Of a DNA stretch of 64,000 bases, positions 27,801-57,030 are shown one piece after another. Where the stretch lies: assembly GCA_044892505.1 (NCBI GenBank), contig CM097883.1:296608001-296672000 (forward strand). Direction: 5' to 3'. A model generated the notes under the pieces. That model had not been told where the DNA came from and did no database searches. It saw only the letters and a list, made by a program, of their open reading frames with translations. A program made the translations under genes and the position numbers. Every line of letters starts with the position of its first letter. Position 1 is the first letter of the stretch. Origin of the DNA: Schmidtea nova (lineage: Eukaryota).

Positions 27801-28560
27801 GAGTGGTGTAGTGAGTTGAGCTGTGCGAAGTAATTGTCGGGTGTGGAGAGTAGTGGTCATGCCTGAAATGGTGTTTGCTGGTGGAGTTGATATTGTGTAA
27901 GTTGGACGTGGTTTCCTGTGAAAAGAGGTGTTCACTGGCAGGAAGTCATCGGAGCGTCCAGGAATATCCGATGACTCAGTTAGTTTTTGCATGGTGGTGG
28001 CTGCTCGTCTGCCATGTACATCCTTCGATGCACGATTTGGCTTCGTTCTTGAACAGGTGGTGGTGGATACAGATTGGAATGACTGGGTTATGAGGATTGT
28101 GGAATTCGGAAGCGCAACCAATGCAGCATTTCTGTGCATGTTTGGGTTGTAATGAGGTGTATTTTGACACTATCAGGGATTTGAGATCATCGTACGGGTT
28201 GTCTGCGTAAAGCGCGTCGGCTATTTTCGTGGCAAGCTCATCTATCAGCTCAGATAGTAGGCTGTCGAGTAGGAAATCGGCGCGTGATTTCGGAAAAGCA
28301 GACGTGCGCGATTCGAAAATGCGGAACCACGACGAGGGTGTGCCGTCGGGATCCAAAAAGAACAAAATTGGGTGTGAAGTGGATAAATAAGGCGGTTCTG
28401 TAGTGGGCCGGACGCCTCCTAAAACGCGGCAATGAATGTCTATGATAGCATTAGGGGGAATATCGGTGAGTGGTGAAACTGGTTCTGTAGTTCAATTTCA
28501 TTAGGTGTTGTGTTAGGAATTGAAGAGGTAAACACTTTTATTGTTTTCTTCAGAAAAACA
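24879..28560 (-). mobile_element. GC-rich Ty3/gypsy LTR retrotransposon (gag-PR-RT-RH-IN), mildly decayed
   Basis: gag (27976-28365), protease FLIDTGSLYSILP, RT PWASPIHLVTKKDGSFRPCGDFR...YLDDII, RNase H LTTDASD/FDRELLAI, integrase IDLVGPLP...YPPQTNGLVERANH. PPT ggcggggg precedes TGTAG at 24929, and an LTR end CTACA lies near 28490. In-frame stops are present (HDA*PMP). Confidence 0.93.
25722..25752 (+). repeat. Interstitial (TTAGGG)n-type tract
   Basis: ttagggttagggttagggttaggagttaggg, located inside the integrase zinc-finger coding region. Confidence 0.75.
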
Positions 28561-29940: not shown

Positions 29941-32245
29941 ACTAAATGTTTAAATGGTTTTATTTAATAAATAAGTTATGCATAATAAAAGTTATAATAC
30001 TTATTTACATAAATAATTTTCACTTACAACGAACATTTACACCGTGTTTCAATGGCGTTTCTCACCTATAATAATTAGTAAACTTATAATATAGAAAAAT
30101 ACACACCTACCTGTACCTTATCCATTGCTGTTTAACTGAATCGTAGCATTTATTATGTCGTAGACAAAGAGATAGAAAAAAATAAAAAACACACAAACAA
30201 AAAATATAGAAAAAAACAGATGTCAACTTTCAGATGCGTTTTTTGTTTTATTCTATAATCTCACCCAATATTTTAATCAACACAAATTATAAATTAAAAT
30301 GACCGATAAATTTTTTAAATGAATTTGAGGACTCTACCTTGGGTTTTCGTGAAAATGATGACATATCATCGTAATATAATTTAAGTTAGAATATATTTTT
30401 ATTTTCGTGAAGATTAAATAGGAATATGGTATCACTTATTTTTATTTTTTAAAATATTTACAATGATATTAGCCTTATAGATATTCCATGTACCTCTGAT
30501 ACTCGAACAAATGTTGGAAATTGGTTAGTTGAAATAATATTTATTTAAAAAGTTAATAGACTTTTAACAAACATTTTATAAAACACGTTGGAAACAAATA
30601 TGTTTATGTAAGAAAATACACATCCGACTGAGATGTTATGGTATTCTATACAGCAACGCCTAGCGAAACAAGCAAGTTTAAACTTGCACAATAAAATCAT
30701 TTGCTGTAGCATTATGATTGTAGTGAAGAGCCGTATTGTGACACAATTTTCATAAGTTTATAAGGTTAAATGGACGGGCCGATTGCTTTATCCGTTTGGT
30801 CACAAAACCACTTAGACCATATGGCGGCTACACAAACGGCTGTCACAAATTTGAAATCTCAGACGACTGCCATAGTCGGTTTGTCTGTCAAATATGTTAA
30901 ATATTTATTTTTAATATTTATTTTAATATTAATAAAAAAACAGTGAAAAATGCATGCAGACTTTCATGTATCCATAAACTATTTATCTATAAACAATTTA
31001 AGTCAATTTTAAAAACAAGGTGACGGGTAAAGCTTTGGAATATTTTCGAAAGGATTTGTTGAAAATGTGAACATGTAACGTCTTAAGATTTATTTTTAAT
31101 TTAAAGTTAATGAATACTTCATATCATCTCAGATATATTCAACATTTCGCCTGTTAAAATTATTCCGTTAAACGAAAATGAAAATATAATACCTTTAAAT
31201 ATATCCTTTCAAATTTATGATTGATTAAACATTTCCTTAGGACTTTGATAAGTTTCTGAAGTTCACATTTTACATTTTGACTAAATATAATCAATTGACT
31301 CTTTAAAAAATCCTTATCTCAATGAGATGAAGATGATTTCATGGAAAAGAAAAACAATAAAATAAATGGATTCATGAAAAGAGGAAGAAAGTGCAAAACA
31401 CGAAAAGTGGGATAGGAAACTTACCGAAAGTTACACTCATAAAAATAGTCAAGTTTGACATTTTTAAAAAAAAAAGTTAAATAGGGCTAAACATGGTGTT
31501 GGGTTATTATTTTGAGTCGGTTTATTTTCTGACTCTTCGTGCTCCGTTAATTGATAAAATAAATAAGACCCAACACAATACATTTTTATTTATTTCCATC
31601 CGACAATTTACAACGACTAAAGATCAATACAAATCCCAGTTCCTGAAAACCGCAAACGCAAAACATATTTCCTACGTTGTAAGCAGTGTACGCAAAATAA
31701 GCTTAAGAAGGAAAAAAAAACTTGTGTTAACTCTACGCCATTATTCCAAGTCCAGTGCTTCGAAGATTGTCATAAAAATTAATTAACTGTTTACTATTAA
31801 CGAATACTTATATTTATTTCACAATGCTTATAATACTAATTTTTATTTTGCTCTAATATAAACATTGTACTTATTTCTAATTTACTCTAATATTATCTTT
31901 TAGGTTTCATCATCATCTTCGTAAGTAGTAAATCGACAATTTTAAAGTTTCATATCAAATTTAAGAACGACGGCTATGACCGTCTGTCATATTTTATATT
32001 GCTGAACGATATGATGTGACAGAACAGCCATACCCATGGGCTAATTAAATACAATATTTAATGAAATTATTAATCACTTATAATTAAATGGTCAGAATTT
32101 AAATCAAATCTTGGTCAGAATTTTATTAATACCATGGTCAGAATAAATATTAAATGGCCAGATAAAAATAATAAAAGGTCAGAATAAAAATAATAAACGG
32201 TCAGAATAAAAAATCGATTGTGGTACTTATACAAGCATTTTTGCC

Positions 32246-32669
32246 TTTTGAACAATTGTTTAATGAAATTAGGTAGAATTAAAAAAATAAATGAAAACAC
32301 ATTATTAATATTTAAATAACAAATTCTATTAATTAATTAATATACATTTTTATTAATTTATCAAAATGCATTGTTTTAATCAATTATTAGCGCTTTAGTT
32401 GCCAACTTTGGCCTCCCTCTTTGTCTTTTCATCCCAATCGGTATCTGTTTAGCTGCTTTTTGAACAATTGTTTAATGAAATTAGGTAGAATTAAAAAAAT
32501 AAATGAAAACACATTATTAATATTTAAATAACAAATTCTATTAATTAATTAATATACATTTTTATTAATTTATCAAAATGCATTGTTTTAATCAATTATT
32601 AGCGCTTTAGTTGCCAACTTTGGCCTCCCTCTTTGTCTTTTCATCCCAATCGGTATCTGTTTAGCTGCT
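32246..32669. repeat. 212-bp direct tandem duplication of the MULE-like 3' end
   Basis: ttttgaacaattgtttaatgaaattagg...gtatctgtttagctgct occurs from 32246 and again from 32458. Confidence 0.9.
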
Positions 32670-33419
32670 GGTGGAGGTTTCACATATTTAAGTCTAATAG
32701 CTAAACCTATTACATGTTTGCACATGTATTTTTTTAAAATAATTTGGGCAAGTACACCGACCACTTTCCCAATCTTCTATAGGAAGATAAACAATCCAAC
32801 ATTTGAAAGCCATGCTTTTAAATTGATCGAAAGTGTCTTTGGTTTTACTTTTAGATCGAATAATGACTTTATTTTATTTTTAATGTCAACATTTAACTTC
32901 ACGGTGAGTAGGAGACAGTGTCAGGTCTGGATCCGTATGAGTTATCGCGCGTTTTTTGGCGCCATTTTTAAAGTGTGTTTTGTTTAAATGTTTGGAATTT
33001 TTATTATTTATTTTATTATTAAATTATTTATTTTTATTTTTTTTATTTAATTAATTATTTTTTTTTAATTAGTTATTTATTTTTTTAATATTATTAATTT
33101 ACTTTTGTTAATATAATTTATTATTGTTCTTAATATTTTTCTACACCTTCAATGATAAACGTTCAATGAAAGCACTCATCAAAATATTATAAGCATATAA
33201 CAAAATGAGACAATTCTGCACAACATAAAATTACTTAATCAAATACGATAAATATTAAACTAATTATTTATTATTATTATTATTATTATTAATATTTCTA
33301 TTATTTCTATGACGTAAATATAGTTTCTAAAAATTATTACCCAAATTATAAAAACAGACTGAAACTAATCTGTACAATATATAACTAAATAATTAAAAAA
33401 CAAAGTTCTTCAACAAATT

Positions 33420-36400
33420 TTATTTAATAAAACTGTTTTCTTCTTCAGTTTGATCTTGGAATTGGTGATATGGATTGATTCTTGGATTGGTATGTTGAAA
33501 TATAACCAAGTCACCTCCCATATAATGGCCATATGCCAAGCTTTTATTTTTCGCCACCCATTTTCTTTTATCATCTGCGTTTGTCAGTGCAGTCTTTTCA
33601 TTTTTAATAGTAAAAAGTTGGTGATTTTTACTTGTGATTCTTGTTTGGGGAACAGAAAATATTTGGTTATTATTAAAACAGTCCAGGTACGACTGATGCT
33701 TTATGTCAGTACCCGCTAATGTTGCCCCCTTAGCTTTATTAGTTTCCTCGTCACCTAAAAGACTATAACATTTAGGTCTAAGAAACACCCACTCCTCATA
33801 TTTAAGCCCTTTATTCTCGTCTTTGAACTTGCCAATGACAGAATCAAGGTTCCTACTATATAATGGGTGATTCGGATCATAATTAGAAGTGTCAAGTAAG
33901 TTATCTCTTATCATGGCCGGTAAAAGAATATCAAGCTTACAATTTCTAATCTCAAGAAAAAACGAATCGGTGTCACCAGCAACTATGTTGATTTCGCAGT
34001 TGAATTCGTTACGATATTTTTGTAACTCTTCATACTGCAGCTGGTACATTCTAATTTTAGATAGATCCAGTACAGTTTGACCAATGTAGCTGGGTCTATC
34101 CAAACACACCGATTCCTGATTCAGCAACACTGCAACCAAATCATCGTCAATTTCGAAAGTCCTTTTAAAAGTTGGCTTAGAAGTATATGTAATCAGCCTA
34201 GAAGCCGAATTACATAATCTTAAATTTATGCGCTTTTTAAGATTCTCTACGGTTTTACCGTAGAGACTATTATTTAATAATTTATAATAATTTTTACCCA
34301 GAGCATTACTTGATTCTGCTCTAAGTCTGGTATTGGTATCGATGTAATCCTTAAAAATACATGCTTGTTTAAATTTAATTGCCCTATGGACATGAGTTAT
34401 TTTTACTCCAAGAGAAAGAAAAAGTTTGAGAAGTCTCCAATGAAGAACATAGTTCTTCTTGGGATAATGCGTAAGCATCAACTTTTCAACCTTTGATCCA
34501 GGTGGACACATCTTTTCAGCGGCAACTGGCAAATCATCCAGCTTGTCGTGAATCGAATCAGGAATTTCTAAATCGACTTCTAATGTAAATCCAAATGTTA
34601 ATACTTCTAAATCAGCAGATTCACAGTAATAAATTATTTTATTTAAGTTTTCCCTATCAGTTACCAATTTAAATTCTTTATAAGGTAGTTTTTGGCTTAA
34701 GGCACACCCATATAAATTATTTATATCTATATAAAGAAGCTCAATGTCGTCGGAAGATACTACATGGTGTTTGTTAACAAATGTTAACCCACCACGGATC
34801 CCCCCTTCGAAAAAATTATACATCTCCATATCTTGAAGCAACTCGATAGGAGATTTCAAAGTTATCAAAGCTGAATTCCATGACATGCCTGGAATTCCCA
34901 AGAAATTAAGAGGCTCAAGTCGGTTATGTGCAATGGATTTTGCCCTAAATTGCTGAAAAAAGTCGGCAAGTAAGAAAACATCCAATTTCAGATATAGCAT
35001 CATATAATCAAACAATGTTTCACAATTAAATTCATCCCATATATGTTGAGCTTTTTCATACTCGTCGATATTAACTCCTTTCCAAATCGGTGGCAACTCG
35101 TATGTATTTTGTAAAACCTCTAAAGACGTTGCAAAATTATATGGGAATATGCCTTTGGAAGTAACTATAGTCCCTATAAATTCGGATGAAGTAAGAGGAA
35201 AATCTGTTAAAGTCTTTACAGCATCGTTTAAGCTACAGCTTACAAATTGGCAAGAATCGATAAATTTAATAGTCAAACTATCATCTCTTGCATATAAAGT
35301 CAAAAACTTTTCACTTGTAGTAGGAATACAACTTATATCCCATTTAACGAATTTATTTAAACCATACTTGAGAATATGATGTAAATCATATCCGCGTAAA
35401 TTATGAAATATTACTGGCATGATGAATCTTATTTGCCGAGAAAAATTGCATTTAGAGCAAGCTGCACCCAAGTATTTACCTGTATAATGGTCATGATCTT
35501 TAACCTGATTTTTCAAAGGTTTATTACATAAATAACAAATAATAGAACTACGAAATGATCTTATTTGTGCAGGAGAAAGATATTCCATTTTCTTTTTGGA
35601 ATTATTTATAAAGTAAGGTAAAACTACTTTTTCTCCTATATCATTGATTTCAGTCAAAAACTCTTCTACACAATTAAGACCATAAAAGCTTTTATACGAT
35701 TTTTCGCCAGTAAAGTTATTAATAAGCAACAAGCCAGCAGAAATAGGCAAGTGACGTTGAAAATACTTATCGTCCTTCGGTAAAACAGCCTCAAAATCGG
35801 CATATACGACAAAAGGAGGGGTAACAATCTTTGACCAGTCTTTAAATTCCAAGTTCTTATCTGAAGGTAAAGTGTACAAAGTTGTACCTAACTGGTTTTT
35901 TATGCATAAAGCCTGATGTTTCTCAAAAGCTTCAGTCAATCTAAAACCATTCAAGCAACGCTCGCACCACGTGCACCTTATTTGAACATCAGTAACAGAA
36001 AGAGTGTCACAATTTAAAAGTCTATTAATATTGGTAACTGCAATATAATTAAAAGAGTCACTTTCCTCTAACAAAATCAAATTAATTGGAGTGCCACCTA
36101 CAACTTTTGACCTATGAATAATATCTACAAATGGATGTTTCATGACTTCTTCCTCCTCAGTAATATTATTTAGATCATATTCGTCATATGAAAGAATATT
36201 TATAGCCAGTTCAGGGTTTTTCGCTTCAAATTTGGGGATATTACATAATTTCATTGGAAAATCAGAAGGATCAAACACAAGGTCTGAGGGATTATAATTA
36301 TAAGACTTACTTCTATTAGATTTCACATCCTTGTATTTTAAAATTGCCAAAATACTATATATAAAACATAATTTATCTGTATTCTTTACATTGACAGTGC

Positions 36401-37118
36401 CATGTTTTGCCTTTAATGATGGTGGGGTTGAACAAGAACCGTGACCACTCAATCTACTTATTTGCGAATATTTTGTAAGTTTAAAGCTTATTTCCTTAAT
36501 TTTATTAATTGACCAATTGCTGCCATTTTCGCAGACTTTAGTCATTTTTTCACTTAATAGAGCAATACCTTCATCTAAAAAGGTATCACTCATTGGTTTT
36601 GCAGAATTTGATATTATAAAAGATTGAAATTGCTTATTCTTTTCAAATTCTACATCAATGCAGAATTGAACTTTTACATACCCCATTTTGGAAATAACTG
36701 AATTAAATTTATTTAATAAAGGCGAAGGAATAATTAATTTATTTAAATTTAAAGAATCTACATCCATTTTAACAATGGCATGGGATTTTTTCAAATTATA
36801 TTTAACCAAAGGTTCAACAGAACCGCCATATTGAACAACATGCAAATTAGGATTAACTAAAACATCGTCATTTGATGAATGGACATCTTCATCATCGGAT
36901 ATTACAATTATTTTAGATGGTTTAGGACAAACAGTAACATTTCGTCGTTTACATTTATTAATTAATGCGAAAAGACTTTTCTTAGTGCATGAGAATTGAT
37001 TTAAATGGAGATAATGTTGGAAATAAAAATCAATGTAATTTATATGTTGGGCGCTCTTACATGTGGGACATAAATAGAAGGTGACTTGGTTATTTATAAG
37101 ACGATAGTATCGCTCCAT
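33420..37118 (-). CDS. polB: Protein-primed family B DNA polymerase (DNA_pol_B_2 type) with an endonuclease VII-like insert, left copy, 1232 aa
   Basis: ExoI YADFE, ExoII HNLRGYD, ExoIII YLKLDV, motif A YIDINNLYG, motif B KLLNNSLYGK, motif C GDTDS, plus GKFK, RPKCY and KAKG. CYLC...DHDH.TG.Y.GAAC..CN lies between ExoI and ExoII. Confidence 0.95.
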   Translation of the reverse strand: MERYYRLINNQVTFYLCPTCKSAQHINYIDFYFQHYLHLNQFSCTKKSLFALINKCKRRNVTVCPKPSKIIVISDDEDVHSSNDDVLVNPNLHVVQYGGSVEPLVKYNLKKSHAIVKMDVDSLNLNKLIIPSPLLNKFNSVISKMGYVKVQFCIDVEFEKNKQFQSFIISNSAKPMSDTFLDEGIALLSEKMTKVCENGSNWSINKIKEISFKLTKYSQISRLSGHGSCSTPPSLKAKHGTVNVKNTDKLCFIYSILAILKYKDVKSNRSKSYNYNPSDLVFDPSDFPMKLCNIPKFEAKNPELAINILSYDEYDLNNITEEEEVMKHPFVDIIHRSKVVGGTPINLILLEESDSFNYIAVTNINRLLNCDTLSVTDVQIRCTWCERCLNGFRLTEAFEKHQALCIKNQLGTTLYTLPSDKNLEFKDWSKIVTPPFVVYADFEAVLPKDDKYFQRHLPISAGLLLINNFTGEKSYKSFYGLNCVEEFLTEINDIGEKVVLPYFINNSKKKMEYLSPAQIRSFRSSIICYLCNKPLKNQVKDHDHYTGKYLGAACSKCNFSRQIRFIMPVIFHNLRGYDLHHILKYGLNKFVKWDISCIPTTSEKFLTLYARDDSLTIKFIDSCQFVSCSLNDAVKTLTDFPLTSSEFIGTIVTSKGIFPYNFATSLEVLQNTYELPPIWKGVNIDEYEKAQHIWDEFNCETLFDYMMLYLKLDVFLLADFFQQFRAKSIAHNRLEPLNFLGIPGMSWNSALITLKSPIELLQDMEMYNFFEGGIRGGLTFVNKHHVVSSDDIELLYIDINNLYGCALSQKLPYKEFKLVTDRENLNKIIYYCESADLEVLTFGFTLEVDLEIPDSIHDKLDDLPVAAEKMCPPGSKVEKLMLTHYPKKNYVLHWRLLKLFLSLGVKITHVHRAIKFKQACIFKDYIDTNTRLRAESSNALGKNYYKLLNNSLYGKTVENLKKRINLRLCNSASRLITYTSKPTFKRTFEIDDDLVAVLLNQESVCLDRPSYIGQTVLDLSKIRMYQLQYEELQKYRNEFNCEINIVAGDTDSFFLEIRNCKLDILLPAMIRDNLLDTSNYDPNHPLYSRNLDSVIGKFKDENKGLKYEEWVFLRPKCYSLLGDEETNKAKGATLAGTDIKHQSYLDCFNNNQIFSVPQTRITSKNHQLFTIKNEKTALTNADDKRKWVAKNKSLAYGHYMGGDLVIFQHTNPRINPYHQFQDQTEEENSFIK

Positions 37119-37498
37119 TAATTTGTGGCAATCGTTATGATTTGACGACTTACAATAATTCGCATAAAATTTACCTTAATATGAAATATCTTTAAATTTA
37201 TCAAAAAATCATTAAAATAAATTAATAAAGATATGAATTATTAGAAAATAAATATGAAATTTAAGATAAATATGATTTAAATATAATAATTACTAAAATA
37301 ATTTAAATTTAATATAAAAATTATTACAAAATAATATTAAAGGAATTTGTTTAAATTAACTGTTTACGTAAAGTAAAGATTATTTAAATTATTACAAAAT
37401 ATTACCAAAAATATATATTTACAAATATTTTACTATATTTATTTACTAAATTAATTAAAATAATTATCAAAATATAATTAAAATTAATCAATACTTAC

Positions 37499-37796
37499 AT
37501 TGAACATTCAATACCACATCAGGTATAACTCCATTATTCATATTATTCTCATTATTAACAATCTCAGCTTGTATGGTAGTTTGTTCAGTCATATTTACAT
37601 CACCTAAAGTAAAAGTTAAATAATTTACTAAGTTAATGATCAAGTACCATTTTCTTCCGCATTTTCTAACATCGATTTCCCAATTGAATTATTGATATTA
37701 CCTAAATTAATATTAAAAAATAATAAATTAAAAAATTAATTTACCATTCTCTTTTCCACTTGGGTTTTCATTCATAAAACTTGTTATGATGTTCAT
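37499..37796 (-). CDS. Three small upstream exons (mirror of 41260-41557), candidate spliced 5' end of the left polB
   Basis: Mirror of the right-arm exons, with the same GT..AG introns and one synonymous ATC/ATT difference. Confidence 0.6.
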
Positions 37797-38339
37797 TTTT
37801 AATGTTTATTATTTGTAAAAGTGAATAATGAATGAAAAAGTATTGTTTATATATCAAAGTTATTACACACACATAACCTTTGACCAATAAAAATCGAGTA
37901 AGGGGTAGGAAATTTATTCTTATCAGCCAATCAGATTCGAGTAAGAGGCAGTAAAGGTATTATTATCATCAGATAGAGAATTATGACTAATCATATATTA
38001 CGTTGCAGTATTTTAAAAAACTAGAAAAGTTATTTCAACAAATTATAATACACATCAAAGTTATAAAATATTTCAATGAATTGCATGCATGTCATATGAT
38101 TAAAATATATTAGACTAAATATTTCAGTAAATTACGTCTAAATTATATTACAATTCAATAATTACGTCAGTTATAAAAAATATTTTAATTAATTTTGATA
38201 AAATACATTAGAATTGTCAATAACACACACAAAACTTTTTTTCATTAGTATAGAAATTAAATTATATCTACACATGATTACAATAAATATTCGATAAATC
38301 TATGCTAAATAGTCGAAAAAATCCAGTATTTTATTACAA

Positions 38340-39570
38340 AAACACGTGCATCACAAACATATCGATATACTTAATTTTGAATCAAGCCATTTTATAGATA
38401 TTAAAATTTATCTATATGTAATTACAATGAAAACTCACTAAAGTTATTTTAAATAACTAAAACTTACAAAATTAATTACAAAACACGTGTGTAACACGAA
38501 AAACGACAACTTTTAGATTTTCTAATCAAACCATTTTATAGGAAATTAAATTTTACATATACTTAATTACAATGAAAAGTCAATAAATTTATTTTATATA
38601 GACGAAAAATGCAAAATTAATTACAAAACACGTGTGTATTACAAACACACCAACAAACTAATTTTCTAATCAAGCCATTTTGTAGAAAATTAAATTTTAT
38701 CTCTACAGTATTACAATGAAAACTCAAAAAAAGTTATTTTATATACATGAAAAATGCTAAAATTAATAACAAAACACGTGTGCAACACGAAAACCAGCAA
38801 CTTTCAAATTTCTAATCAAGCCATTTTAAAGGAAATTAAATTTTACATATACTTTATTACAATGAAAACTCAAAAAAGTTATTTTATATACATGAAAAAT
38901 GCTAAAATTAATAACAAAACACGTGTGCAACACGAAAACCGGCAACTTTCAAATTTCAAATCAAGCCATTTTATAGAAATTTAAATTTTACATATACTTT
39001 ATTACAATGAAAACTCAATAAATTTATTTTATATATACGAAAAATGCAAAATTAATTACAAAACACGTGTGTATTACAAACACACTAGCAAACTAATTTT
39101 CTAATAAAGCCATTTTGTAGACATTTAAATTTTATACATATAATTTTACAAGGAAAACTCAAAAAAGTTATTTTATATACATGAAAAATGCAAAATTAAT
39201 TACAAAACACGTTTGCATTACAAGCACACCAACAAACTAATTTTCTAATCAAGCCATTTTATAGGAAATTAAATTTTACTTATACTTTATTACAATGAAA
39301 AATACATAAAGTTACTTTATATTGTTAAAAATTTGAAAATTCAAAATAAAACACGTGTGCATCACAAAATACGACAACTTTCAGAATTCTAATAAAGCCA
39401 TTTTGTAGAAAATTAAATTTTATCTATACAATATTACAATGAAAACTCAAAAATGTTATTTTATTTATGTGAAATATACAAAGTTAATGACAAAACACGT
39501 GTGCACAACAATATACACAACATTTTGAATATTTAATTCAGCCATTTTGTAGACAATAAAATTCTGTCTA
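38340..39570 (+). repeat. Tandem array of ~9 units of 141-146 bp, each with an E-box core (aaaacacgtg)
   Basis: CACGTG or its variant at 38343, 38484, 38629, 38775, 38920, 39064, 39208, 39352 and 39496. Confidence 0.9.
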
Positions 39571-39639
39571 TCTATTGTTTCACTAAAAACTCGATGGAGC
39601 CGGTTTATCGACTCGAAAAAGGCGTTTGAAGTCTTGTAG

Positions 39640-40011
39640 TAGGAAGTAGTGAGCTATCCAAACCACTACCCCATGTGTGTATATTACGTAACCGCTTCGG
39701 GGATTTATGTAGCACACCTGATTACGTAATCATTACATAATCAAGAGCGTTTAATAAAACCCGATAATTACGTAATTTTATATATAATTACGTAATTTCA
39801 TATATTTGTTTAAATTGAGTGAATTTTTTGTTTAAATTATGTGAATTTGTGTTTAAATTAAGTGAATTTTTGTTTAAATTAAATGGACTATTTGTTTTAA
39901 TCATATGACTTTTTTGTTTTAATTTTTTTTAAATATGAAATTTTATTTTAAATTTAATAAAAAATATATGAGTTCACACATGGGGGGCGGCAGACCGCTC
40001 ACTACCTCCTA
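39640..40011. other. Central spacer unit with imperfect inverted ends and repeated TTACGTAA palindromes
   Basis: taggaagtagtgagc...ccccatgtgtg (39640-79) mirrors cacacatgggg...gctcactacctccta (39975-40011). attacgtaa occurs four times between 39680 and 39800. Confidence 0.6.
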
Positions 40012-40715
40012 TGTATATAAAATAAATTTATTGACTTTTCATTGTAATAAAGTATATGTAAAATTTAATTTCCTATAAAATGGCTTGATTTGAAATTTGA
40101 AAGTTGCCGGTTTTCGTGTTGCACACGTGTTTTGTTATTAATTTTAGCATTTTTCATGTATATAAAATAACTTTTTTGAGTTTTCATTGTAATAAAGTAT
40201 ATGTAAAATTTAATTTCCTTTAAAATGGCTTGATTAGAAATTTGAAAGTTGCTGGTTTTCGTGTTGCACACGTGTTTTGTTATTAATTTTAGCATTTTTC
40301 ATGTATATAAAATAACTTTTTTTGAGTTTTCATTGTAATACTGTAGAGATAAAATTTAATTTTCTACAAAATGGCTTGATTAGAAAATTAGTTTGTTGGT
40401 GTGTTTGTAATACACACGTGTTTTGTAATTAATTTTGCATTTTTCGTCTATATAAAATAAATTTATTGACTTTTCATTGTAATTAAGTATATGTAAAATT
40501 TAATTTCCTATAAAATGGTTTGATTAGAAAATCTAAAAGTTGTCGTTTTTCGTGTTACACACGTGTTTTGTAATTAATTTTGTAAGTTTTAGTTATTTAA
40601 AATAACTTTAGTGAGTTTTCATTGTAATTACATATAGATAAATTTTAATATCTATAAAATGGCTTGATTCAAAATTAAGTATATCGATATGTTTGTGATG
40701 CACACGTGTTTTTGT
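40012..40715 (-). repeat. Mirror copy of the ~145-bp array, about 5 units
   Basis: cacacgtgtt(t) motifs near 40122, 40267, 40413, 40558 and 40701. Confidence 0.9.
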
Positions 40716-41107
40716 AATAAAATACTGGATTTTTTCGACTATTTAGCATAGATTTATCGAATATTTATTGTAATCATGTGTAGATATAATTTAATTTCTA
40801 TACTAATGAAAATTATAAAAGTTTTGTGTGTGTTATTGACAATTCTAATGTATTTTATCAAAATTAATTAAAATATTTTTTATAACTGACGTAATTATTG
40901 AATTGTAATATAATTTAGACGTAATTTACTGAAATATTTAGTCTAATATATTTTAATCATATGACATGCATGCAATTCATTGAAATATTTTATAACTTTG
41001 ATGTGTATTATAATTTGTTGAAATAACTTTTCTAGTTTTTTAAAATACTGCAACGTAATATATGATTAGTCATAATTCTCTATCTGATGATAATAATACC
41101 TTTACTG

Positions 41108-41210
41108 CCTCTTACTCGAATCTGATTGGCTGATAAGAATAAATTTCCTACCCCTTACTCGATTTTTATTGGTCAAAGGTTATGTGTGTGTAATAACTTT
41201 GATATATAAA
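41108..41210 (+). promoter_or_regulatory. Putative Pol II promoter: two CTTACTCGA-N5-ATTGG (inverted CCAAT) modules plus TATATAAA (mirrored at ~37846-37948)
   Basis: cttactcgaatctgattgg and cttactcgatttttattgg, with TATATAAA at 41203-10, about 50 bp upstream of the ATG at 41260. Confidence 0.5.
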
Positions 41211-41259
41211 CAATACTTTTTCATTCATTATTCACTTTTACAAATAATAAACATTAAAA

Positions 41260-41557
41260 ATGAACATTATAACAAGTTTTATGAATGAAAACCCAAGTGG
41301 AAAAGAGAATGGTAAATTAATTTTTTAATTTATTATTTTTTAATATTAATTTAGGTAATATCAATAATTCAATTGGGAAATCGATGTTAGAAAATGCGGA
41401 AGAAAATGGTACTTGATCATTAACTTAGTAAATTATTTAACTTTTACTTTAGGTGATGTAAATATGACTGAACAAACTACCATACAAGCTGAGATTGTTA
41501 ATAATGAGAATAATATGAATAATGGAGTTATACCTGATGTGGTATTGAATGTTCAAT
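41260..41557 (+). CDS. Three small phase-1 exons (41260-41311, 41355-41408, 41453-41557), candidate spliced 5' end of the right polB
   Basis: Introns of 43 nt (gtaaat..tttag) and 44 nt (gtactt..tttag), then a gtaagt donor at 41558. The spliced frame is stop-free: MNIITSFMNENPSGKENGNINNSIGKSMLENAEENGDVNMTEQTTIQAEIVNNENNMNNGVIPDVVLNVQ. Confidence 0.65.
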
Positions 41558-41937
41558 GTAAGTATTGATTAATTTTAATTATATTTTGATAATTATTTTA
41601 ATTAATTTAGTAAATAAATATAGTAAAATATTTGTAAATATATATTTTTGGTAATATTTTGTAATAATTTAAATAATCTTTACTTTACGTAAACAGTTAA
41701 TTTAAACAAATTCCATTAATATTATTTTGTAATAATTTTTATATTAAATTTAAATTATTTTAGTAATTATTATATTTAAATCATATTTATCTTAAATTTC
41801 ATATTTATTTTCTAATAATTCATATCTTTATTAATTTATTTTAATGATTTTTTGATAAATTTAAAGATATTTCATATTAAGGTAAATTTTATGCGAATTA
41901 TTGTAAGTCGTCAAATCATAACGATTGCCACAAATTA

Positions 41938-44900
41938 ATGGAGCGATACTATCGTCTTATAAATAACCAAGTCACCTTCTATTTATGTCCCACATGTAAG
42001 AGCGCCCAACATATAAATTACATTGATTTTTATTTCCAACATTATCTCCATTTAAATCAATTCTCATGCACTAAGAAAAGTCTTTTCGCATTAATTAATA
42101 AATGTAAACGACGAAATGTTACTGTTTGTCCTAAACCATCTAAAATAATTGTAATATCCGATGATGAAGATGTCCATTCATCAAATGACGATGTTTTAGT
42201 TAATCCTAATTTGCATGTTGTTCAATATGGCGGTTCTGTTGAACCTTTGGTTAAATATAATTTGAAAAAATCCCATGCCATTGTTAAAATGGATGTAGAT
42301 TCTTTAAATTTAAATAAATTAATTATTCCTTCGCCTTTATTAAATAAATTTAATTCAGTTATTTCCAAAATGGGGTATGTAAAAGTTCAATTCTGTATTG
42401 ATGTAGAATTTGAAAAGAATAAGCAATTTCAATCTTTTATAATATCAAATTCTGCAAAACCAATGAGTGATACCTTTTTAGATGAAGGTATTGCTCTATT
42501 AAGTGAAAAAATGACTAAAGTCTGCGAAAATGGCAGCAATTGGTCAATTAATAAAATTAAGGAAATAAGCTTTAAACTTACAAAATATTCGCAAATATGT
42601 AGATTGAGTGGTCACGGTTCTTGTTCAACCCCACCATCATTAAAGGCAAAACATTGCACTGTCAATGTAAAGAATACAGATAAATTATGTTTTATATATA
42701 GTATTTTGGCAATTTTAAAATACAAGGATGTGAAATCTAATAGAAGTAAGTCTTATAATTATAATCCCTCAGACCTTGTGTTTGATCCTTCTGATTTTCC
42801 AATGAAATTATGTAATATCCCCAAATTTGAAGCGAAAAACCCTGAACTGGCTATAAATATTCTTTCATATGACGAATATGATCTAAATAATATTACTGAG
42901 GAGGAAGAAGTCATGAAACATCCATTTGTAGATATTATTCATAGGTCAAAAGTTGTAGGTGGCACTCCAATTAATTTGATTTTGTTAGAGGAAAGTGACT
43001 CTTTTAATTATATTGCAGTTACCAATATTAATAGACTTTTAAATTGTGACACTCTTTCTGTTACTGATGTTCAAATAAGGTGCACGTGGTGCGAGCGTTG
43101 CTTGAATGGTTTTAGATTGACTGAAGCTTTTGAGAAACATCAGGCTTTATGCATAAAAAACCAGTTAGGTACAACTTTGTACACTTTACCTTCAGATAAG
43201 AACTTGGAATTTAAAGACTGGTCAAAGATTGTTACCCCTCCTTTTGTCGTATATGCCGATTTTGAGGCTGTTTTACCGAAGGACGATAAGTATTTTCAAC
43301 GTCACTTGCCTATTTCTGCTGGCTTGTTGCTTATTAATAACTTTACTGGCGAAAAATCGTATAAAAGCTTTTATGATCTTAACTTTGTAGAAGAGTTTTT
43401 GACTGAAATCAATGATATAGGAGAAAAAGTAGTTTTACCTTACTTTATAAATAATTTCAAAAAGAAAATGGAATATCTTTCTCCTGCACAAATAAGATCA
43501 TTTCGTAGTTCTATTATTTGTTATTTATGTAATAAACCTTTGAAAAATCAGGTTAAAGATCATGACCATTATACAGGTAAATACTTGGGTGCAGCTTGCT
43601 CTAAATGCAATTTTTCTCGGCAAATAAGATTCATCATGCCAGTAATATTTCATAATTTACGCGGATATGATTTACATCATATTCTCAAGTATGGTTTAAA
43701 TAAATTCGTTAAATGGGATATAAGTTGTATTCCTACTACAAGTGAAAAGTTTTTGACTTTATATGCAAGAGATGATAGTTTGACTATTAAATTTATCGAT
43801 TCTTGCCAATTTGTAAGCTGTAGCTTAAACGATGCTGTAAAGACTTTAACAGATTTTCCTCTTACTTCATCCGAATTTATAGGGACTATAGTTACTTCCA
43901 AAGGCATATTCCCATATAATTTTGCAACGTCTTTAGAGGTTTTACAAAATACATACGAGTTGCCACCGATTTGGAAAGGAGTTAATATCGACGAGTATGA
44001 AAAAGCTCAACATATATGGGATGAATTTAATTGTGAAACATTGTTTGATTATATGATGCTATATCTGAAATTGGATGTTTTCTTACTTGGCGACTTTTTT
44101 CAGCAATTTAGGGCAAAATCCATTGCACATAACCGACTTGAGCCTCTTAATTTCTTGGGAATTCCAGGCATGTCATGGAATTCAGCTTTGATAACTTTGA
44201 AATCTCCTATCGAGTTGCTTCAAGATATGGAGATGTATAATTTTTTCGAAGGGGGGATCCGTGGTGGGTTAACATTTGTTAACAAACACCATGTAGTATC
44301 TTCCGACGACATTGAGCTTCTTTATATAGATATAAATAATTTATATGGGTGGGCCTTAAGCCAAAAACTACCTTATAAAGAATTTAAATTGGTAACTGAT
44401 AGGGAAAACTTAAATAAAATAATTTATTACTGTGAATCTGCTGATTTAGAAGTATTAACATTTGGATTTACATTAGAAGTCGATTTAGAAATTCCTGATT
44501 CGATTCACGACAAGCTGGATGATTTGCCAGTTGCCGCTGAAAAGATGTGTCCTCCTGGATCAAAGGTTGAAAAGTTGATGCTTACGCATTATCCCAAGAA
44601 GAGCTATGTTCTTCATTGGAGACTTCTCAAACTTTTTCTTTCTCTTGGAGTAAAAATAACTCATGTCCATAGGGCAATTAAATTTAAACAAGCATGTATT
44701 TTTAAGGATTACATCGATACCAATACCAGACTTAGAGCAGAATCAAGTAATGCTCTGGGTAAAAATTATTATAAATTATTAAATAATAGTCTCTACGGTA
44801 AAACCGTAGAGAATCTTAAAAAGCGCATAAATTTAAGATTATGTAATTCGGCTTCTAGGCTGATTACATATACTTCTAAGCCAACTTTTAAAAGGACTTT

Positions 44901-45645
44901 CGAAATTGACGATGATTTGGTTGCAGTGTTGCTGAATCAGGAATCGGTGTGTTTGGATAGACCCAGCTACATTGGTCAAACTGTACTGGATCTATCTAAA
45001 CTTAGAATGTACCAGCTGCAGTATGAAGAGTTACAAAAATATCGTAACGAATTCAACTGCGAAATCAACATAGTTGCTGGTGACACCGATTCGTTTTTTC
45101 TTGAGATTAGAAATTGTAAGCTTGATATTCTTTTACCGGCCATGATAAGAGATAACTTACTTGACACTTCTAATTATGATCCGAATCACCCATTATATAG
45201 TAGGAACCTTGATTCTGTCATTGGCAAGTTCAAAGACGAGAATAAAGGGCTTAAATATGAGGAGTGGGTGTTTCTTAGACCTAAATGTTATAGTCTTTTA
45301 GGTGACGAGGAAACTAATAAAGCTAAGGGGGCAACATTAGCGGGTACTGACATAAAGCATCAGTCGTACCTGGACTGTTTTAATAATAACCAAATATTTT
45401 CTGTTCCCCAAACAAGAATCACAAGTAAAAATCACCAACTTTTTACTATTAAAAATGAAAAGACTGCACTGACAAACGCAGATGATAAAAGAAAATGGGT
45501 GGCGAAAAATAAAAGCTTGGCATATGGCCATTATATGGGAGGTGACTTGGTTATATTTCAACATACCAATCCAAGAATCAATCCATATCACCAATTCCAA
45601 GATCAAACTGAAGAAGAAACAGTTTTATTAAATAAAATTTGTTGA
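41938..45645 (+). CDS. polB: Protein-primed family B DNA polymerase with an endonuclease VII-like insert, right copy, 1235 aa
   Basis: Same motifs as the left copy; differs by 9 substitutions and a C-terminal 1-bp frameshift. Confidence 0.95.
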   Translation: MERYYRLINNQVTFYLCPTCKSAQHINYIDFYFQHYLHLNQFSCTKKSLFALINKCKRRNVTVCPKPSKIIVISDDEDVHSSNDDVLVNPNLHVVQYGGSVEPLVKYNLKKSHAIVKMDVDSLNLNKLIIPSPLLNKFNSVISKMGYVKVQFCIDVEFEKNKQFQSFIISNSAKPMSDTFLDEGIALLSEKMTKVCENGSNWSINKIKEISFKLTKYSQICRLSGHGSCSTPPSLKAKHCTVNVKNTDKLCFIYSILAILKYKDVKSNRSKSYNYNPSDLVFDPSDFPMKLCNIPKFEAKNPELAINILSYDEYDLNNITEEEEVMKHPFVDIIHRSKVVGGTPINLILLEESDSFNYIAVTNINRLLNCDTLSVTDVQIRCTWCERCLNGFRLTEAFEKHQALCIKNQLGTTLYTLPSDKNLEFKDWSKIVTPPFVVYADFEAVLPKDDKYFQRHLPISAGLLLINNFTGEKSYKSFYDLNFVEEFLTEINDIGEKVVLPYFINNFKKKMEYLSPAQIRSFRSSIICYLCNKPLKNQVKDHDHYTGKYLGAACSKCNFSRQIRFIMPVIFHNLRGYDLHHILKYGLNKFVKWDISCIPTTSEKFLTLYARDDSLTIKFIDSCQFVSCSLNDAVKTLTDFPLTSSEFIGTIVTSKGIFPYNFATSLEVLQNTYELPPIWKGVNIDEYEKAQHIWDEFNCETLFDYMMLYLKLDVFLLGDFFQQFRAKSIAHNRLEPLNFLGIPGMSWNSALITLKSPIELLQDMEMYNFFEGGIRGGLTFVNKHHVVSSDDIELLYIDINNLYGWALSQKLPYKEFKLVTDRENLNKIIYYCESADLEVLTFGFTLEVDLEIPDSIHDKLDDLPVAAEKMCPPGSKVEKLMLTHYPKKSYVLHWRLLKLFLSLGVKITHVHRAIKFKQACIFKDYIDTNTRLRAESSNALGKNYYKLLNNSLYGKTVENLKKRINLRLCNSASRLITYTSKPTFKRTFEIDDDLVAVLLNQESVCLDRPSYIGQTVLDLSKLRMYQLQYEELQKYRNEFNCEINIVAGDTDSFFLEIRNCKLDILLPAMIRDNLLDTSNYDPNHPLYSRNLDSVIGKFKDENKGLKYEEWVFLRPKCYSLLGDEETNKAKGATLAGTDIKHQSYLDCFNNNQIFSVPQTRITSKNHQLFTIKNEKTALTNADDKRKWVAKNKSLAYGHYMGGDLVIFQHTNPRINPYHQFQDQTEEETVLLNKIC

Positions 45646-47385
45646 AGAACTTTGTTTTTTAATTATTTAGTTATATATTGTACAGATTAGTTTCAGTCTG
45701 TTTTTATAATTTGGGTAATAATTTTTAGAAACTATGGTTACGTCATAGAAATAATAGAAATATTAATAATAATAATAATAATAAATAATTAGTTTAATAT
45801 TTATCGTATTTGATTAAGTAATTTTATGTTGTGCAGAATTGTCTCATTTTGTTATATGCTTATAATATTTTGATGAGTGCTTTCATTGAACGTTTATCAT
45901 TGAAGGTGTAGAAAAATATTAAGAACAATAATAAATTATATTAACAAAAGTAAATTAATAATATTAAAAAAATAAATAACTAATTAAAAAAAATAATTAA
46001 TTAAATAAAAAAAATAAAAATAAATAATTTAATAATAAAATAAATAATAAAAATTCCAAACATTTAAACAAAACACACTTTAAAAATGGCGCCAAAAAAC
46101 GCGCGATAACTCATACGGATCCAGACCTGACACTGTCTCCTACTACGGTGTTCACTTCTAACGCTTCATGTGAATGTCCTTCATTTGTTCTAAATATGAT
46201 TGCATCGGTTTTATTGATGCTATAGAAAATGTACAATCCAGCGTCGCATTGCTGTCCTCTTCTTTTAACAACATTGCAACGACAGTAGACTTTTTTTACC
46301 CTCACTGGTAACACTTTTGTAATGGTAACTCCATATTGTTTCAGCTTTTACTGCATTAACTGCCTCTCCCTTTGTATCATATGTGTTGCTCATATACCAG
46401 CTACGAGTTCTCTTATTTCTTCTGGTTGTACTCAAGTCTGTTTTATCATTGAATTCATCATTAGATTCTGACTAGTATTCTGACCGATGTATTCGGACCA
46501 TTTAATATAAAATCTGACCAATGTAATATAAATTCTGACCATAACCATATTAAAATTCTGACCAGAAAAATACGAGCTATTATTAATTTTATCACCTATA
46601 GTAACAAATTTATAAAAATATTTAATTCATATAGCCAAAAATCTCGGAGTGTAAACTTTTGAACTTTCAGTACATTTTGTGTCCGTCAACATGTTAATAA
46701 ATAAATGCGCCTAAACCACTTTTTACTCTAGATACATTTCTAAAAGTTAAAAATTTTAGAATTTACATAAAACACCAGTTTACTCTAGAAAAAATAAAGA
46801 TTGGTTTCAAATCTGAAATATAAACAAAATAGTAAAATAACCGAACAATAAATTTGTTAAAATCGTGTTGCAATTATGTTTGCCTTAGCCCCTTTTTTGC
46901 TATGTAATCCAATATAATTGTCGTGTTTGAAGTGGTGGGTTGTTGATCGTCAATATGACCTTGACGTTTCTATGGCTCTCATCAACAACTCAACACATAA
47001 AACATTTAAGCTACCATCTTGTTACCCGTCACTATGTAACGTTGGTACTGTAACAAGTGGGTGGGTATTCGCAATCAGTGAGCGTCGTCAATACGAAACT
47101 ATGATTGACCGAATATTTCCTGTGTCCAAGGGCTACCGATAGAAGGTTTCTCGCCCCTTTTTGTCCCTCCTATGCATTATTTACTTCAGAAAACTTCATA
47201 TACTTCATCTACTATTGCACTCCAGTTGTTTTTACTCAATTTATTCTATACATTGCTTTATTTCATTCAATCATTCAATCCAAAAAAAAATAAAAGCAAG
47301 AGAACACTTTAATAAACAAAAAACAACACAAACTACAAACAAAAAAACAAATAAATACACGATAGGATATTAGTTGTCTATCAAA

Positions 47386-55842: not shown

Positions 55843-57030
55843 ACATTAACAGAAGGTATTACTCTTCTTAATGAAAAAATAACATTAATTAACGATAAGG
55901 GGAGTAATTGGGTTTCATTTATAGTATTTTCGCAATTTTGAAATACGATGAGATTGCGAATAATAGAAATAGGGTCAATAATTATTATGTTGCTGATCTT
56001 GACTTTGACCCTTCTGAAATGTCCATGAGACTTTGCAATATTCCAAAATTTAAGTTATAAAACCACAGACTTCCTATTAACATGAAGATACTCTTCTTAA
56101 TACATTGACAAATTCTGAGGTTTTCAAACACCCCTGTGCTGATATCATAAATTCAAGCTTTTTGTTTTTTTGGTTGTTAAAATAACTAGGATTCATTGGA
56201 AGGTTCAATATAAACAGAAACGGAATTTTAAAAAATACATATACACTAATACCCAGCTTATGGCAGTTTCTTCTACGGCTTTAGATAAAAATTACTAAAA
56301 ACTCTTAAATAATACTCTATGGAAATACTGTTGAAAATCTTAAGAATTTGCTTAAGTTAAGGTCATGTAATTCAGCATCAAAACTGATTACATATTAATC
56401 AAAAACAACTTTTCAGAAAACTTAGAAAAATTCACGATGACTTGATATTTGTTCTGCTTAATAAAGACTCTGTATGTTTAGATAGATTAAGCTAAATTGT
56501 ACTACAACCGTACTGGATCTATTTAAACTTGAAATGTATCAACTCCAGTATGAAGAATTACAAAAATATCCTTATGAATTCAACTGTGAGATTAATATTG
56601 TTGCTGATAATACTTTCTTTTTGGTTAAGAATTTTAAGTTGGAAACTCTTTTGTCGCCTATTGTTAAAAAACGACTTTTGGATACCTCGAAAAATGACGC
56701 AATCCATCCCTTGTATTCTAGGAACCTTGATTCTGTCATTGTTAAATTCAAATATGAGAATGAAGGACTTAAATACAAGGAGTGAGTCTTTTTAAAACTA
56801 AAGTTCTATAGTTTGTTAGGTGAAAAAATAAAATAATAAAGGAAAAGGTATAACATTGAAGGGAAATGACTGCAAATACCAGTCAAACATAGATTATTAT
56901 AACAATAATTCAAAACTTTGTATAGATCAGTCTTGAATAGTAATTAAAAACCACCAACATTTTACACACAAAATTTCTAATATATCATTGACCAACTTGA
57001 ACGAAATGACTATTATAAGGGTATTGATGG
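55843..57030 (+). pseudogene. polB: Decayed, internally deleted paralog of the pPolB
   Basis: TEGITLLNEK..GSNW, DLDFDPSEMSMRLCNIPKF and KHPCADII are followed directly by KKYIYTNTQL...KLLNN.LYGNTVENLK and MYQLQYEELQKY.EFNCEINIVA...HPLYSRNLDSVI.KFKYENEGLKYKE. Many stops and frameshifts. Confidence 0.85.

What the first reader, a model, noticed from the sequence alone, without database searches (positions are those of the whole stretch)
32907..46144. 13.2-kb palindromic, polymerase-only Polinton-type element inserted as one unit
Seen: 5'-AGTAGG...CCTACT-3' ends, a perfect 6-bp TSD (ACGGTG), and two ~6.1-kb inverted arms, each with an open pPolB ORF pointing outward to the termini. The ~1-kb spacer is non-coding. 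Established: Polintons/Mavericks have AG-rich termini, ~6-bp TSDs made by a retroviral-type integrase, TIRs usually well under ~1 kb, one pPolB, and integrase, packaging ATPase, cysteine protease and capsid genes. Here essentially the whole element is TIR and none of those other genes is visible. Inference: a fold-back (snap-back/defective-interfering-like) replicon that keeps its own polymerase and terminal origins but borrows integrase and perhaps capsids in trans. As single-stranded DNA it could fold into a giant panhandle, the replication intermediate proposed for protein-primed elements. This is the best candidate for an undescribed system in the window.
Basis: partly seen in the sequence, partly recalled or inferred. 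Interest (0 to 1): 0.9.

Follow-up and report, generated by a model that had tools for sequence, protein, structure and literature searches.

The report
Palindromic polymerase-only Polinton copy in planarian
A flatworm chromosome carries a 13.2-kb mirror-image derivative of a virus-like Polinton/Maverick transposon that keeps only the DNA polymerase gene, in two copies; the structure is real and unusual, but only this one copy could be found, so it may be a single replication or repair accident rather than a new kind of mobile element.

Summary
Window 32907-46144 is bounded by AGTAGG...CCTACT and a perfect ACGGTG duplication. It consists of two inverted arms (6129 and 6131 nt, 99.5% identical) around a 978-bp centre. 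Each arm carries an open 1232/1235-aa protein-primed family B polymerase gene reading outward. The closest relatives (53-57% identity) sit in full Polintons with integrase, packaging ATPase and protease. None of those genes is present here.

New points:
- The host is a planarian (Schmidtea).
- The centre is not anonymous. It holds 3.7 extra units of a 144-bp array that also ends both arms, plus a 376-bp miniature unit with its own inverted ends that resemble the element's termini.
- The right arm begins within 0-2 nt of that miniature unit's outer end, so a terminus-type DNA end took part in making the palindrome.
- Since the duplication both gene copies have drifted neutrally (9 nonsynonymous, 3 synonymous differences).
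- No second copy of this family was found in the window or in any reachable collection.

Verdict: a real, young fold-back Polinton derivative. Integration as one unit and in-place rearrangement both fit and cannot be separated here. The "new system" reading is possible but unsupported.

The parts
32901..32906 (.). left copy of the 6-bp target-site duplication ACGGTG
   Evidence: identical hexamer at 46145-46150
32907..39035 (.). left arm of the palindrome (6129 nt)
   Evidence: 99.5% identical to the reverse complement of 40014-46144
32907..32929 (+). outer terminus T1 (left), starts AGTAGG; followed to 33419 by A+T-rich short tandem repeats
33420..37118 (-). pPolB gene, left copy, open, 1232 aa. 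It has an N-terminal conserved domain, a C2HC zinc site, a His-Me finger (Endonuclease VII-like) insert, and exonuclease and polymerase motifs.
37119..38332 (.). 1.2-kb non-coding stretch upstream of the left polymerase gene
   Evidence: no ORF above 51 aa and no match to any protein of five related Polintons
38333..39563 (.). 144-bp tandem array, 8.5 units about 80% alike, one CACGTG per unit. The first 4.9 units belong to the arm; the other 3.7 are extra units in the spacer.
39036..40013 (.). non-palindromic centre (978 bp): extra array units, about 74 bp of decayed unit plus unique sequence, then the miniature unit
39638..40013 (.). miniature terminus-bearing unit (376 bp). Inverted ends lie at 39640-39654 / 39997-40011 and at 39669-39679 / 39975-39985. 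It holds four TTACGTAA motifs and six 21-22-bp repeats. Its right end matches T1 at 16 of 22 positions. No 6-bp duplication surrounds it. Its right end is the junction with the right arm.
40014..46144 (.). right arm of the palindrome (6131 nt); its inner 4.9 array units are 40014 to about 40716
41938..45645 (+). pPolB gene, right copy, open, 1235 aa
46122..46144 (-). outer terminus T1 (right), ends CCTACT
46145..46150 (.). right copy of the 6-bp target-site duplication ACGGTG

Best explanation
This is a real, young, non-autonomous fold-back derivative of a Polinton/Maverick in a planarian chromosome.

Shown: one end of a Polinton is present twice in mirror image around a 978-bp centre. That end comprises terminus T1, the outward-reading polymerase gene, 1.2 kb upstream and a 144-bp array. 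The whole is flanked by a 6-bp duplication. It has no integrase, packaging or capsid genes. The junction between the centre and the right arm lies at the outer end of an embedded terminus-like unit.

Inferred, and favoured: a progenitor molecule ran from T1 to that embedded terminus (about 7.1 kb, 32907-40013) and had a free DNA end there. During protein-primed strand-displacement copying, or by end joining, that end was continued onto the complementary copy of the same sequence inside the array. This is a copy-back event. It gave a linear molecule with two identical T1 ends. An integrase supplied by another Polinton then inserted that molecule as one unit and made the ACGGTG duplication.

Since then the copy has been inert DNA and both polymerase genes have drifted neutrally. 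Nothing indicates that it founded a lineage.
For: - Structure, ends and duplication.
- Polymerase identity: PF03175, E 5e-29; 159 relatives.
- Relatives at 53-57% identity lie in complete Polintons with rve integrase, A32-like ATPase and C48 protease. In L006 the polymerase is the last gene and reads toward an end that also finishes CCTACT.
- Absence of other genes.
- Embedded terminus: it matches T1 at 16 of 22 positions, while none of 98016 background 22-mers reaches 16. The motif TAGGAGNNAGTG has 6 hits against 1.1 expected, and four of them are the four ends.
- The arm homology stops at 40014, 0-2 nt from that unit's end.
- That end lacks the last two bases of the expected ...CCTACT. This fits a polymerase or end-joining joint at a free end better than a canonical integrase joint.
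- Young age and no selection: 0.31% substitutions between the arms, 9 nonsynonymous against 3 synonymous differences, and departures from family-conserved residues in both copies, 4 in the right and 2 in the left.
- The two host flanks carry matching inverted 22-bp arrays (32050-32157 and 46498-46603), as expected if one pre-existing repeat was split by a single insertion.
Against: - Only one copy exists in all the data I could reach, so integration as a unit is not demonstrated.
- A rearrangement inside a resident Polinton would leave the same ends and the same duplication.
- There is no microhomology beyond a TA run at the junction.
- A hairpin primed by the miniature unit's own inverted ends would predict a right arm starting opposite 39637, not opposite 39035.
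- The postulated 7.1-kb progenitor and a helper with T1 ends have not been seen.
- It is unknown whether the 1.2-kb upstream stretch and the array belong to the Polinton or are captured host DNA.
Confidence: 0.45

Rival explanations
1. In-place rearrangement. An ordinary Polinton with short T1 inverted repeats inserted at ACGGTG. Later a break or stalled fork at the embedded terminus-like unit was repaired by copying the left arm backwards. Synthesis returned to the chromosome through the homology of the right terminal repeat. This replaced all inner genes by a mirror copy of the left arm.
For: - It gives the same ends and the same duplication.
- Divergence is even along the arms: 2/513, 12/3699, 2/1214 and 3/703 mismatches in the terminal, coding, upstream and array parts. 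This gives no sign that the outer ends are older or younger than the rest.
- The miniature unit has short inverted repeats that could stall replication.
- This is the only copy found.
Against: - It needs two template switches or a long resection.
- It does not by itself explain why no remnant of the genes that sit next to the polymerase in relatives is left upstream of either copy.
- A junction exactly at a terminus-type end is more natural if the element's own machinery or a free end was involved.
Confidence: 0.33
2. One reading: a propagating satellite replicon. It would be a lineage of palindromic, polymerase-only elements that replicate with their own polymerase from two identical terminal origins and depend on helper Polintons for integration and perhaps packaging.
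For: - Both polymerase ORFs are open and all family-invariant catalytic columns are present in the left copy.
- The two ends are perfect and identical.
- There is a 6-bp duplication.
- The window holds other, older polymerase-only remnants.
Against: - No second copy of this family was found anywhere I could search.
- No palindromic polymerase pair occurs in 87 related loci. Those are mostly short-read contigs that could not assemble one, so this is weak evidence.
- The two copies have changed at conserved residues at a neutral ratio.
- The centre looks like a one-off junction.
Confidence: 0.1
3. Deletion derivative of a long-repeat Polinton family. In this family the terminal inverted repeats would normally include the polymerase gene, and this copy has lost the unique middle that held integrase and capsid genes.
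For: Terminal repeats that contain genes and tandem arrays are known in other linear replicons (my own knowledge). Tlr1, a relative of Polintons, has long complex repeats (PMC4028283).
Against: - Related full Polintons show a single polymerase gene.
- The published range for the repeats is 100-1500 bp (PMC10748475).
- The centre holds no remnant of any other gene.
Confidence: 0.07
4. Assembly artefact: a fold-back chimeric read or a mis-join created the second arm.
For: Palindromic chimeras occur in long-read data (my own knowledge). The raw reads could not be inspected here.
Against: - The arms differ by 19 substitutions and 5 indels and by 3.7 array units.
- The symmetry ends exactly at the element termini.
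- The flanks are distinct host sequence with a matching 6-bp duplication.
- There is no N in the element.
Confidence: 0.05

Closest known systems
Polinton / Maverick self-synthesizing transposons (polintoviruses)
   Same: Protein-primed family B polymerase; 5'-AG...CT-3' ends; 6-bp target-site duplication; 13.2 kb is within the published 13-25 kb (PMC10748475). The nearest polymerases lie in complete Polintons. A nuclease domain inserted in the polymerase is also described for some Polintons (PMC10748475).
   Different: No integrase, packaging ATPase, protease or capsid genes. Two polymerase genes. Inverted repeats of 6.1 kb against the published 100-1500 bp, so 93% of the element is repeat.
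Snap-back / copy-back defective genomes of viruses, including the long inverted terminal duplications of adenovirus defective genomes
   Same: One genome end with its origin is duplicated in mirror image around a short unique loop, and most genes are lost. The definitions of copy-back and snap-back forms are in PMC6140465. The adenovirus cases are from my own knowledge and were not checked here.
   Different: Those are free molecules seen in infected cells. This one is integrated in a chromosome with a target-site duplication and retains an intact polymerase gene in each arm. Interference and helper dependence are untested.
Foldback-type transposons (Drosophila FB, Galileo)
   Same: Very long inverted repeats that contain internal tandem arrays (PMC3573991, PMC4079207). 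Here a 144-bp array forms the inner end of each arm.
   Different: Their repeats are non-coding, and any transposase (P-type in Galileo) sits in the middle. Here the repeats carry a whole gene and the ends are Polinton-type.
Palindrome formation at a DNA end next to a short inverted repeat (Tetrahymena rDNA, induced palindromes in yeast)
   Same: A giant palindrome with a small non-palindromic centre that contains a short inverted repeat next to what looks like a former DNA end (my own knowledge).
   Different: That model predicts arms that start immediately outside the short repeat. Here the right arm starts about 600 bp further in, inside the array.
Bidnaviridae (small insect viruses with a Polinton-derived polymerase and inverted terminal repeats)
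   Same: A small linear replicon that kept a Polinton-type polymerase and terminal repeats while losing the Polinton integrase and capsid module (my own knowledge). An adenovirus-like replication mode is stated in PMC4938981.
   Different: Bidnaviruses have capsid and other genes of different origin, single-stranded segmented genomes and short repeats. No sequence comparison was made here.

Membership tests
Polinton / Maverick | [quoted passage not shown] | tested here: met
   PF03175 at E 5e-29 and 5e-28 on both copies. 159 relatives were found, and the nearest lie in full Polintons. Exonuclease and polymerase motif columns are invariant and present.
Polinton / Maverick | retrovirus-type (rve) integrase gene inside the element | tested here: not met
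   tblastn with the integrases of L001 and L002 hits only retrotransposon integrases elsewhere in the window. Nothing in 32907-33419 or 37119-41937 scores at E below 0.1. Pfam on the small ORFs is blank.
Polinton / Maverick | 5'-AG...CT-3' ends in terminal inverted repeats | tested here: met
   AGTAGG...CCTACT. The same terminal hexamer lies at the putative end of relative L006.
Polinton / Maverick | target-site duplication of about 6 bp (5-8 bp in PMC10748475) | tested here: met
   ACGGTG on both sides
Polinton / Maverick | [quoted passage not shown] | tested here: not met
   All 33 neighbour proteins of five related Polintons, including the ATPase and C48 protease, were searched against the element without a hit. 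The capsid genes of the relatives carry no Pfam label, so they were tested only as unnamed neighbours.
Polinton / Maverick | terminal inverted repeats of 100-1500 bp (PMC10748475) | tested here: not met
   The arms are 6129 and 6131 nt.
Snap-back / copy-back defective genome of a protein-primed replicon | mirror duplication of one genome end around a unique loop, with loss of other genes | tested here: met
Snap-back / copy-back defective genome of a protein-primed replicon | arises during replication as a free molecule and depends on a helper | not testable with these tools
   There is only indirect support: the junction lies at a terminus-type end. An in-place origin fits equally well.
Foldback-type transposon | long non-coding inverted repeats built of tandem arrays | tested here: not met
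   Only the inner 0.7 kb of each arm is array. The arms carry a 3.7-kb gene.
Miniature non-autonomous Polinton derivative (the 376-bp inner unit) | family-type inverted ends plus its own target-site duplication | tested here: inconclusive
   Ends: met. Duplication: absent (TCTTGT on the left, GTATAT or TATATA on the right), as expected if its right flank was replaced when the palindrome formed.

The most novel reading that the evidence does not exclude
Polintons of animals can shed palindromic, polymerase-only satellites. Such a satellite would arise by copy-back at an embedded terminus during free, protein-primed replication. It would still carry two working origins and its own polymerase, and it would be re-inserted by a helper's integrase. 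This copy would then be a chromosomal fossil of a free linear replication stage of animal Polintons, and possibly one member of a lineage.
Probability: 0.12. Interest if true: 0.8.

Novelty: new variant of a known kind. Interest (0 to 1): 0.5.

Why it matters
It is still largely inferred, not observed, that animal Polintons/Mavericks replicate as free linear DNA by protein priming. A chromosomal copy whose shape is what copy-back replication produces, and whose inner junction sits on a terminus-type end, would be indirect physical evidence for that stage. It would also show that such elements can throw off defective satellites, as viruses do.

If it instead arose in place, it shows how terminal repeats and embedded termini make these large elements prone to palindrome formation, which is a source of genome instability. 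In either case a 12-kb near-perfect palindrome with two divergent genes is a likely source of hairpin RNA and small RNAs in a planarian genome.

Tried and rejected
- **Pfam on the whole 1232-aa protein** gave only a weak Endonuclease_7 hit. The polymerase family appeared only when the C-terminal 813 aa were searched alone.
- **PDB by sequence.** The single protein gave nothing meaningful. The family profile gave only weak hits to phi29 polymerase (E 0.04) and to a His-Me finger restriction enzyme (E 0.017).
- **Other copies of the family.** The terminus was searched in JGI metagenomes and IMG/VR with 0 hits. The window holds only the two ends. The arm and centre have no nucleotide match elsewhere in the window apart from an old 70% remnant. 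The N-terminal 419 aa were searched as a separate query to catch short assembled fragments and gave no near-identical hit.
- **Non-coding parts against related loci:** only chance-level matches.
- **Recurrence in relatives.** In 87 loci (694 kb) the only head-to-head polymerase pair, in L002, is two different genes 50% identical, so it is adjacent elements and not a palindrome. These contigs are mostly short-read assemblies, so the negative is weak.
- **Literature.** I found no paper describing a palindromic or polymerase-only Polinton.
- **N-terminal domain.** The model is confident (pLDDT 87) but no PDB fold matches at E 0.001 or better. There is only a weak partial likeness to the little-finger region of Y-family polymerases.
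- **Hairpin priming from the miniature unit's own inverted ends** was rejected as the whole explanation, because it predicts a different start for the right arm.
- **Two independent head-to-head insertions** were rejected, because the outer duplication matches.
- **Rfam:** no RNA family in the window.
Full report

Yes.
- The element starts AGTAGG at 32907 and ends CCTACT at 46144. ACGGTG lies immediately outside on both sides.
- The 23-nt terminus occurs nowhere else in the window, with zero matches expected by chance.
- BLAST of the element against its own reverse complement gives one pair of arms, 32907-39035 and 40014-46144. They are 99.5% identical, with 19 mismatches and 5 indels. Between them is a 978-bp centre.
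- None of the window's four N runs lies inside the element.
- Each arm has one long open frame, 33420-37118 (-) and 41938-45645 (+). Both read outward and stop 513 and 499 bp from the end.
- The two products are 1218/1227 identical and end in different short tails.

**2. What the gene is**

- Searched whole, the protein gives only a borderline Endonuclease_7 hit. Its C-terminal 813 residues match PF03175, the organellar/viral type B polymerase family, at E 5e-29 (left copy) and 5e-28 (right copy).
- A protein search finds 159 relatives, the best at 56% identity by BLASTP in that search, most of them with PF03175 and/or PF02945.
- In an alignment of 36 of them, the exonuclease I-III and polymerase A, B and C motif columns are invariant and present in the window's left copy. 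So are a Cys/His pair, a C2HC cluster and the His-Me finger cysteines and histidines.
- The His-Me finger insert is found in 33 of the 36. Nuclease inserts in Polinton polymerases have been described (PMC10748475).
- Residues 100-430 fold confidently (pLDDT 87) but match no Pfam family and no PDB fold at E 0.001 or better.

**3. What the relatives look like**

The contigs that encode the nearest relatives are ordinary Polintons.
- L001 and L002 carry an rve integrase, an A32-like ATPase and some ten further genes.
- L003 has a C48 protease just upstream of the polymerase.
- L006 has RING, ATPase, integrase and further genes, with the polymerase as the last gene, reading outward as in the window's arms. 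Downstream of it comes a 650-bp stretch with 19 copies of ATTACGTAAT and then a sequence ending CCTACT.

The window's polymerase therefore belongs to a bona fide Polinton lineage of animals. The host is a planarian: a receptor exon at 5412-6065 is 95% identical to Schmidtea mediterranea GCR402.

**4. Is it polymerase-only?**

As far as these tools can tell, yes.
- tblastn with all 33 neighbour proteins of five related Polintons finds nothing in the terminal 513 bp or in 37119-41937 at E below 0.1.
- In the whole window it finds only retrotransposon integrases and two decayed polymerase remnants.
- No ORF in the centre exceeds 76 aa, and none has a credible Pfam match.

**5. Anatomy of the centre (new)**

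- From the polymerase start inward, each arm has 1.2 kb of non-coding DNA and then a tandem array of a 144-bp unit. The units are about 80% alike and each holds one CACGTG.
- The arms share 4.9 units. The left side continues for 3.7 more units (39036-39563).
- About 74 bp follow, and then comes a 376-bp unit (39638-40013). It has its own inverted ends (15 nt at 93% plus 11 nt at 100%), four TTACGTAA motifs and six 21-22-bp repeats.
- Its left end starts AGTAGGAAGTAGTG. Its right end, read inward, matches the outer terminus at 16 of 22 positions. Among 98016 background 22-mers from the rest of the window, none reaches 16 and one reaches 15.
- The motif TAGGAGNNAGTG with at most one mismatch occurs six times against 1.1 expected. 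Four of the six are exactly the two outer and two inner ends.

The centre therefore holds a miniature Polinton-type unit, in style close to the subterminal region of relative L006. There is no 6-bp duplication around it. Its right end lacks the last two bases of the expected CCTACT. The right arm begins at the next base. So the palindrome's inner junction sits on a terminus-type end.

**6. Age and selection**

- The arms differ by 0.31% in substitutions, spread evenly over the terminal, coding, upstream and array parts.
- In the coding part, 9 of the 12 differing codons change the residue.
- At columns conserved in at least 77% of 30 relatives, the right copy departs four times and the left copy twice.
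- One indel close to the 3' end gives the two products different tails.

Both genes are still open, but nothing indicates that selection has acted on them since the duplication. That is what is expected of a resident, recently formed copy.

**7. How it most likely arose**

- *Shown:* a mirror duplication of one element end; identical outer termini; one 6-bp duplication; a junction at an embedded terminus.
- *Inferred:* a DNA end at that embedded terminus was continued onto a second, complementary copy of the same sequence inside the array.

If this happened on a free linear molecule, by polymerase turn-around or copy-back or by end joining, the product has two perfect T1 ends and can be inserted by a helper's integrase as one unit. 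I favour this route at 0.45.

The same picture can arise in place. A break or stalled fork at the embedded unit inside a resident Polinton could be repaired by copying the left arm backwards and returning through the right terminal repeat (0.33).

The two routes predict different things elsewhere in the genome and in other individuals, and nothing different inside this window.

Less likely readings are a family whose normal repeats include the polymerase (0.07) and an assembly artefact (0.05). The artefact is contradicted by the 24 differences between the arms, the unequal arrays, symmetry that stops at the termini, and distinct flanks that share inverted 22-bp arrays, as if one older repeat had been split.

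**8. Is it a system?**

- The terminus is absent from JGI metagenomes and IMG/VR.
- There is no near-identical polymerase fragment in the protein collection.
- None of the 87 related loci shows a palindromic polymerase pair.

These negatives are weak. The planarian genome itself is not in the collections, and short-read contigs cannot hold a 6-kb palindrome. I put 0.1-0.12 on a propagating lineage.

**9. Comparison with what is known**

It works like a snap-back or copy-back defective genome of a linear, protein-primed replicon. In its ends, duplication and polymerase it is Polinton-derived. It fails three defining Polinton features that were tested here: integrase, virion module and repeat length. 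It should therefore be filed as a non-autonomous, rearranged derivative and not as a Polinton proper. I found no description of a palindromic or polymerase-only Polinton in the searchable literature. Published repeats are 100-1500 bp (PMC10748475).

Noticed in passing
window 55906-57002 (+) and 9058-9255 (-): Two older, decayed polymerase remnants of a related Polinton family. The first is about 70% identical in DNA to the arms, with one large internal deletion and at least three frame changes. The second is a short C-terminal piece. No other Polinton gene lies near either.
   Followed up: partly
window 38333-39563 and 40014-40716: Every 144-bp array unit carries one CACGTG palindrome. 13 of the window's 17 CACGTG sites are in the two arrays, against 3.2 sites expected for the whole window. 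They could be binding sites upstream of both divergent polymerase genes.
   Followed up: no
window 33420-37118, protein residues 100-430 and 527-559: The polymerase has a confidently folded N-terminal domain with invariant Cys and His columns but no Pfam or PDB match. It also has a His-Me finger (Endonuclease VII-like) insert that 33 of 36 relatives share.
   Followed up: partly
window 32050-32212, 32242-32669 and 46490-46603: The element sits inside another repeat. Inverted arrays of 21-23-bp units lie on both flanks, and a 212-bp unit is duplicated in tandem on the left.
   Followed up: partly
window 24925-28365 (-): Gypsy-type retrotransposon ORFs (RT, RNase H, rve integrase) in a block of 35-46% G+C, much above the window's mean.
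   Followed up: no
window 20783-21991 (-): A 402-aa ORF made of several CENP-B/pogo-type helix-turn-helix units, with no transposase core detected.
   Followed up: no
window 5412-6065 (+): A rhodopsin-family receptor exon 95% identical to Schmidtea mediterranea GCR402. This identifies the host as a planarian; the 5% difference may mean a paralogue or a sister species. N runs lie just upstream at 4655-5036 and 5150-5346.
   Followed up: partly
L001 12382-13431; L002 7583-8161; L005 6430-8662: Related Polintons carry cell-type genes: a Bcl-2-like and a TBP-like gene in L001, TBP-like genes in L002 and L005, and a dUTPase and a RING protein in L005.
   Followed up: no
L002 3-6315: Two different polymerase genes lie head to head, only 50% identical. 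They are adjacent or nested Polintons, not a palindrome.
   Followed up: yes
L006 12990-13704; L007 12747-13385: Downstream of the polymerase, L006 has 19 ATTACGTAAT motifs and then a putative end finishing CCTACT. L007 has inverted tandem arrays there and no other Polinton gene within 10 kb.
   Followed up: partly
L005 1-24: The contig starts with what looks to me like a sequencing-adapter tail (my own knowledge, not tested). That contig end may therefore be a read artefact or a recurrent physical fragment end.
   Followed up: no
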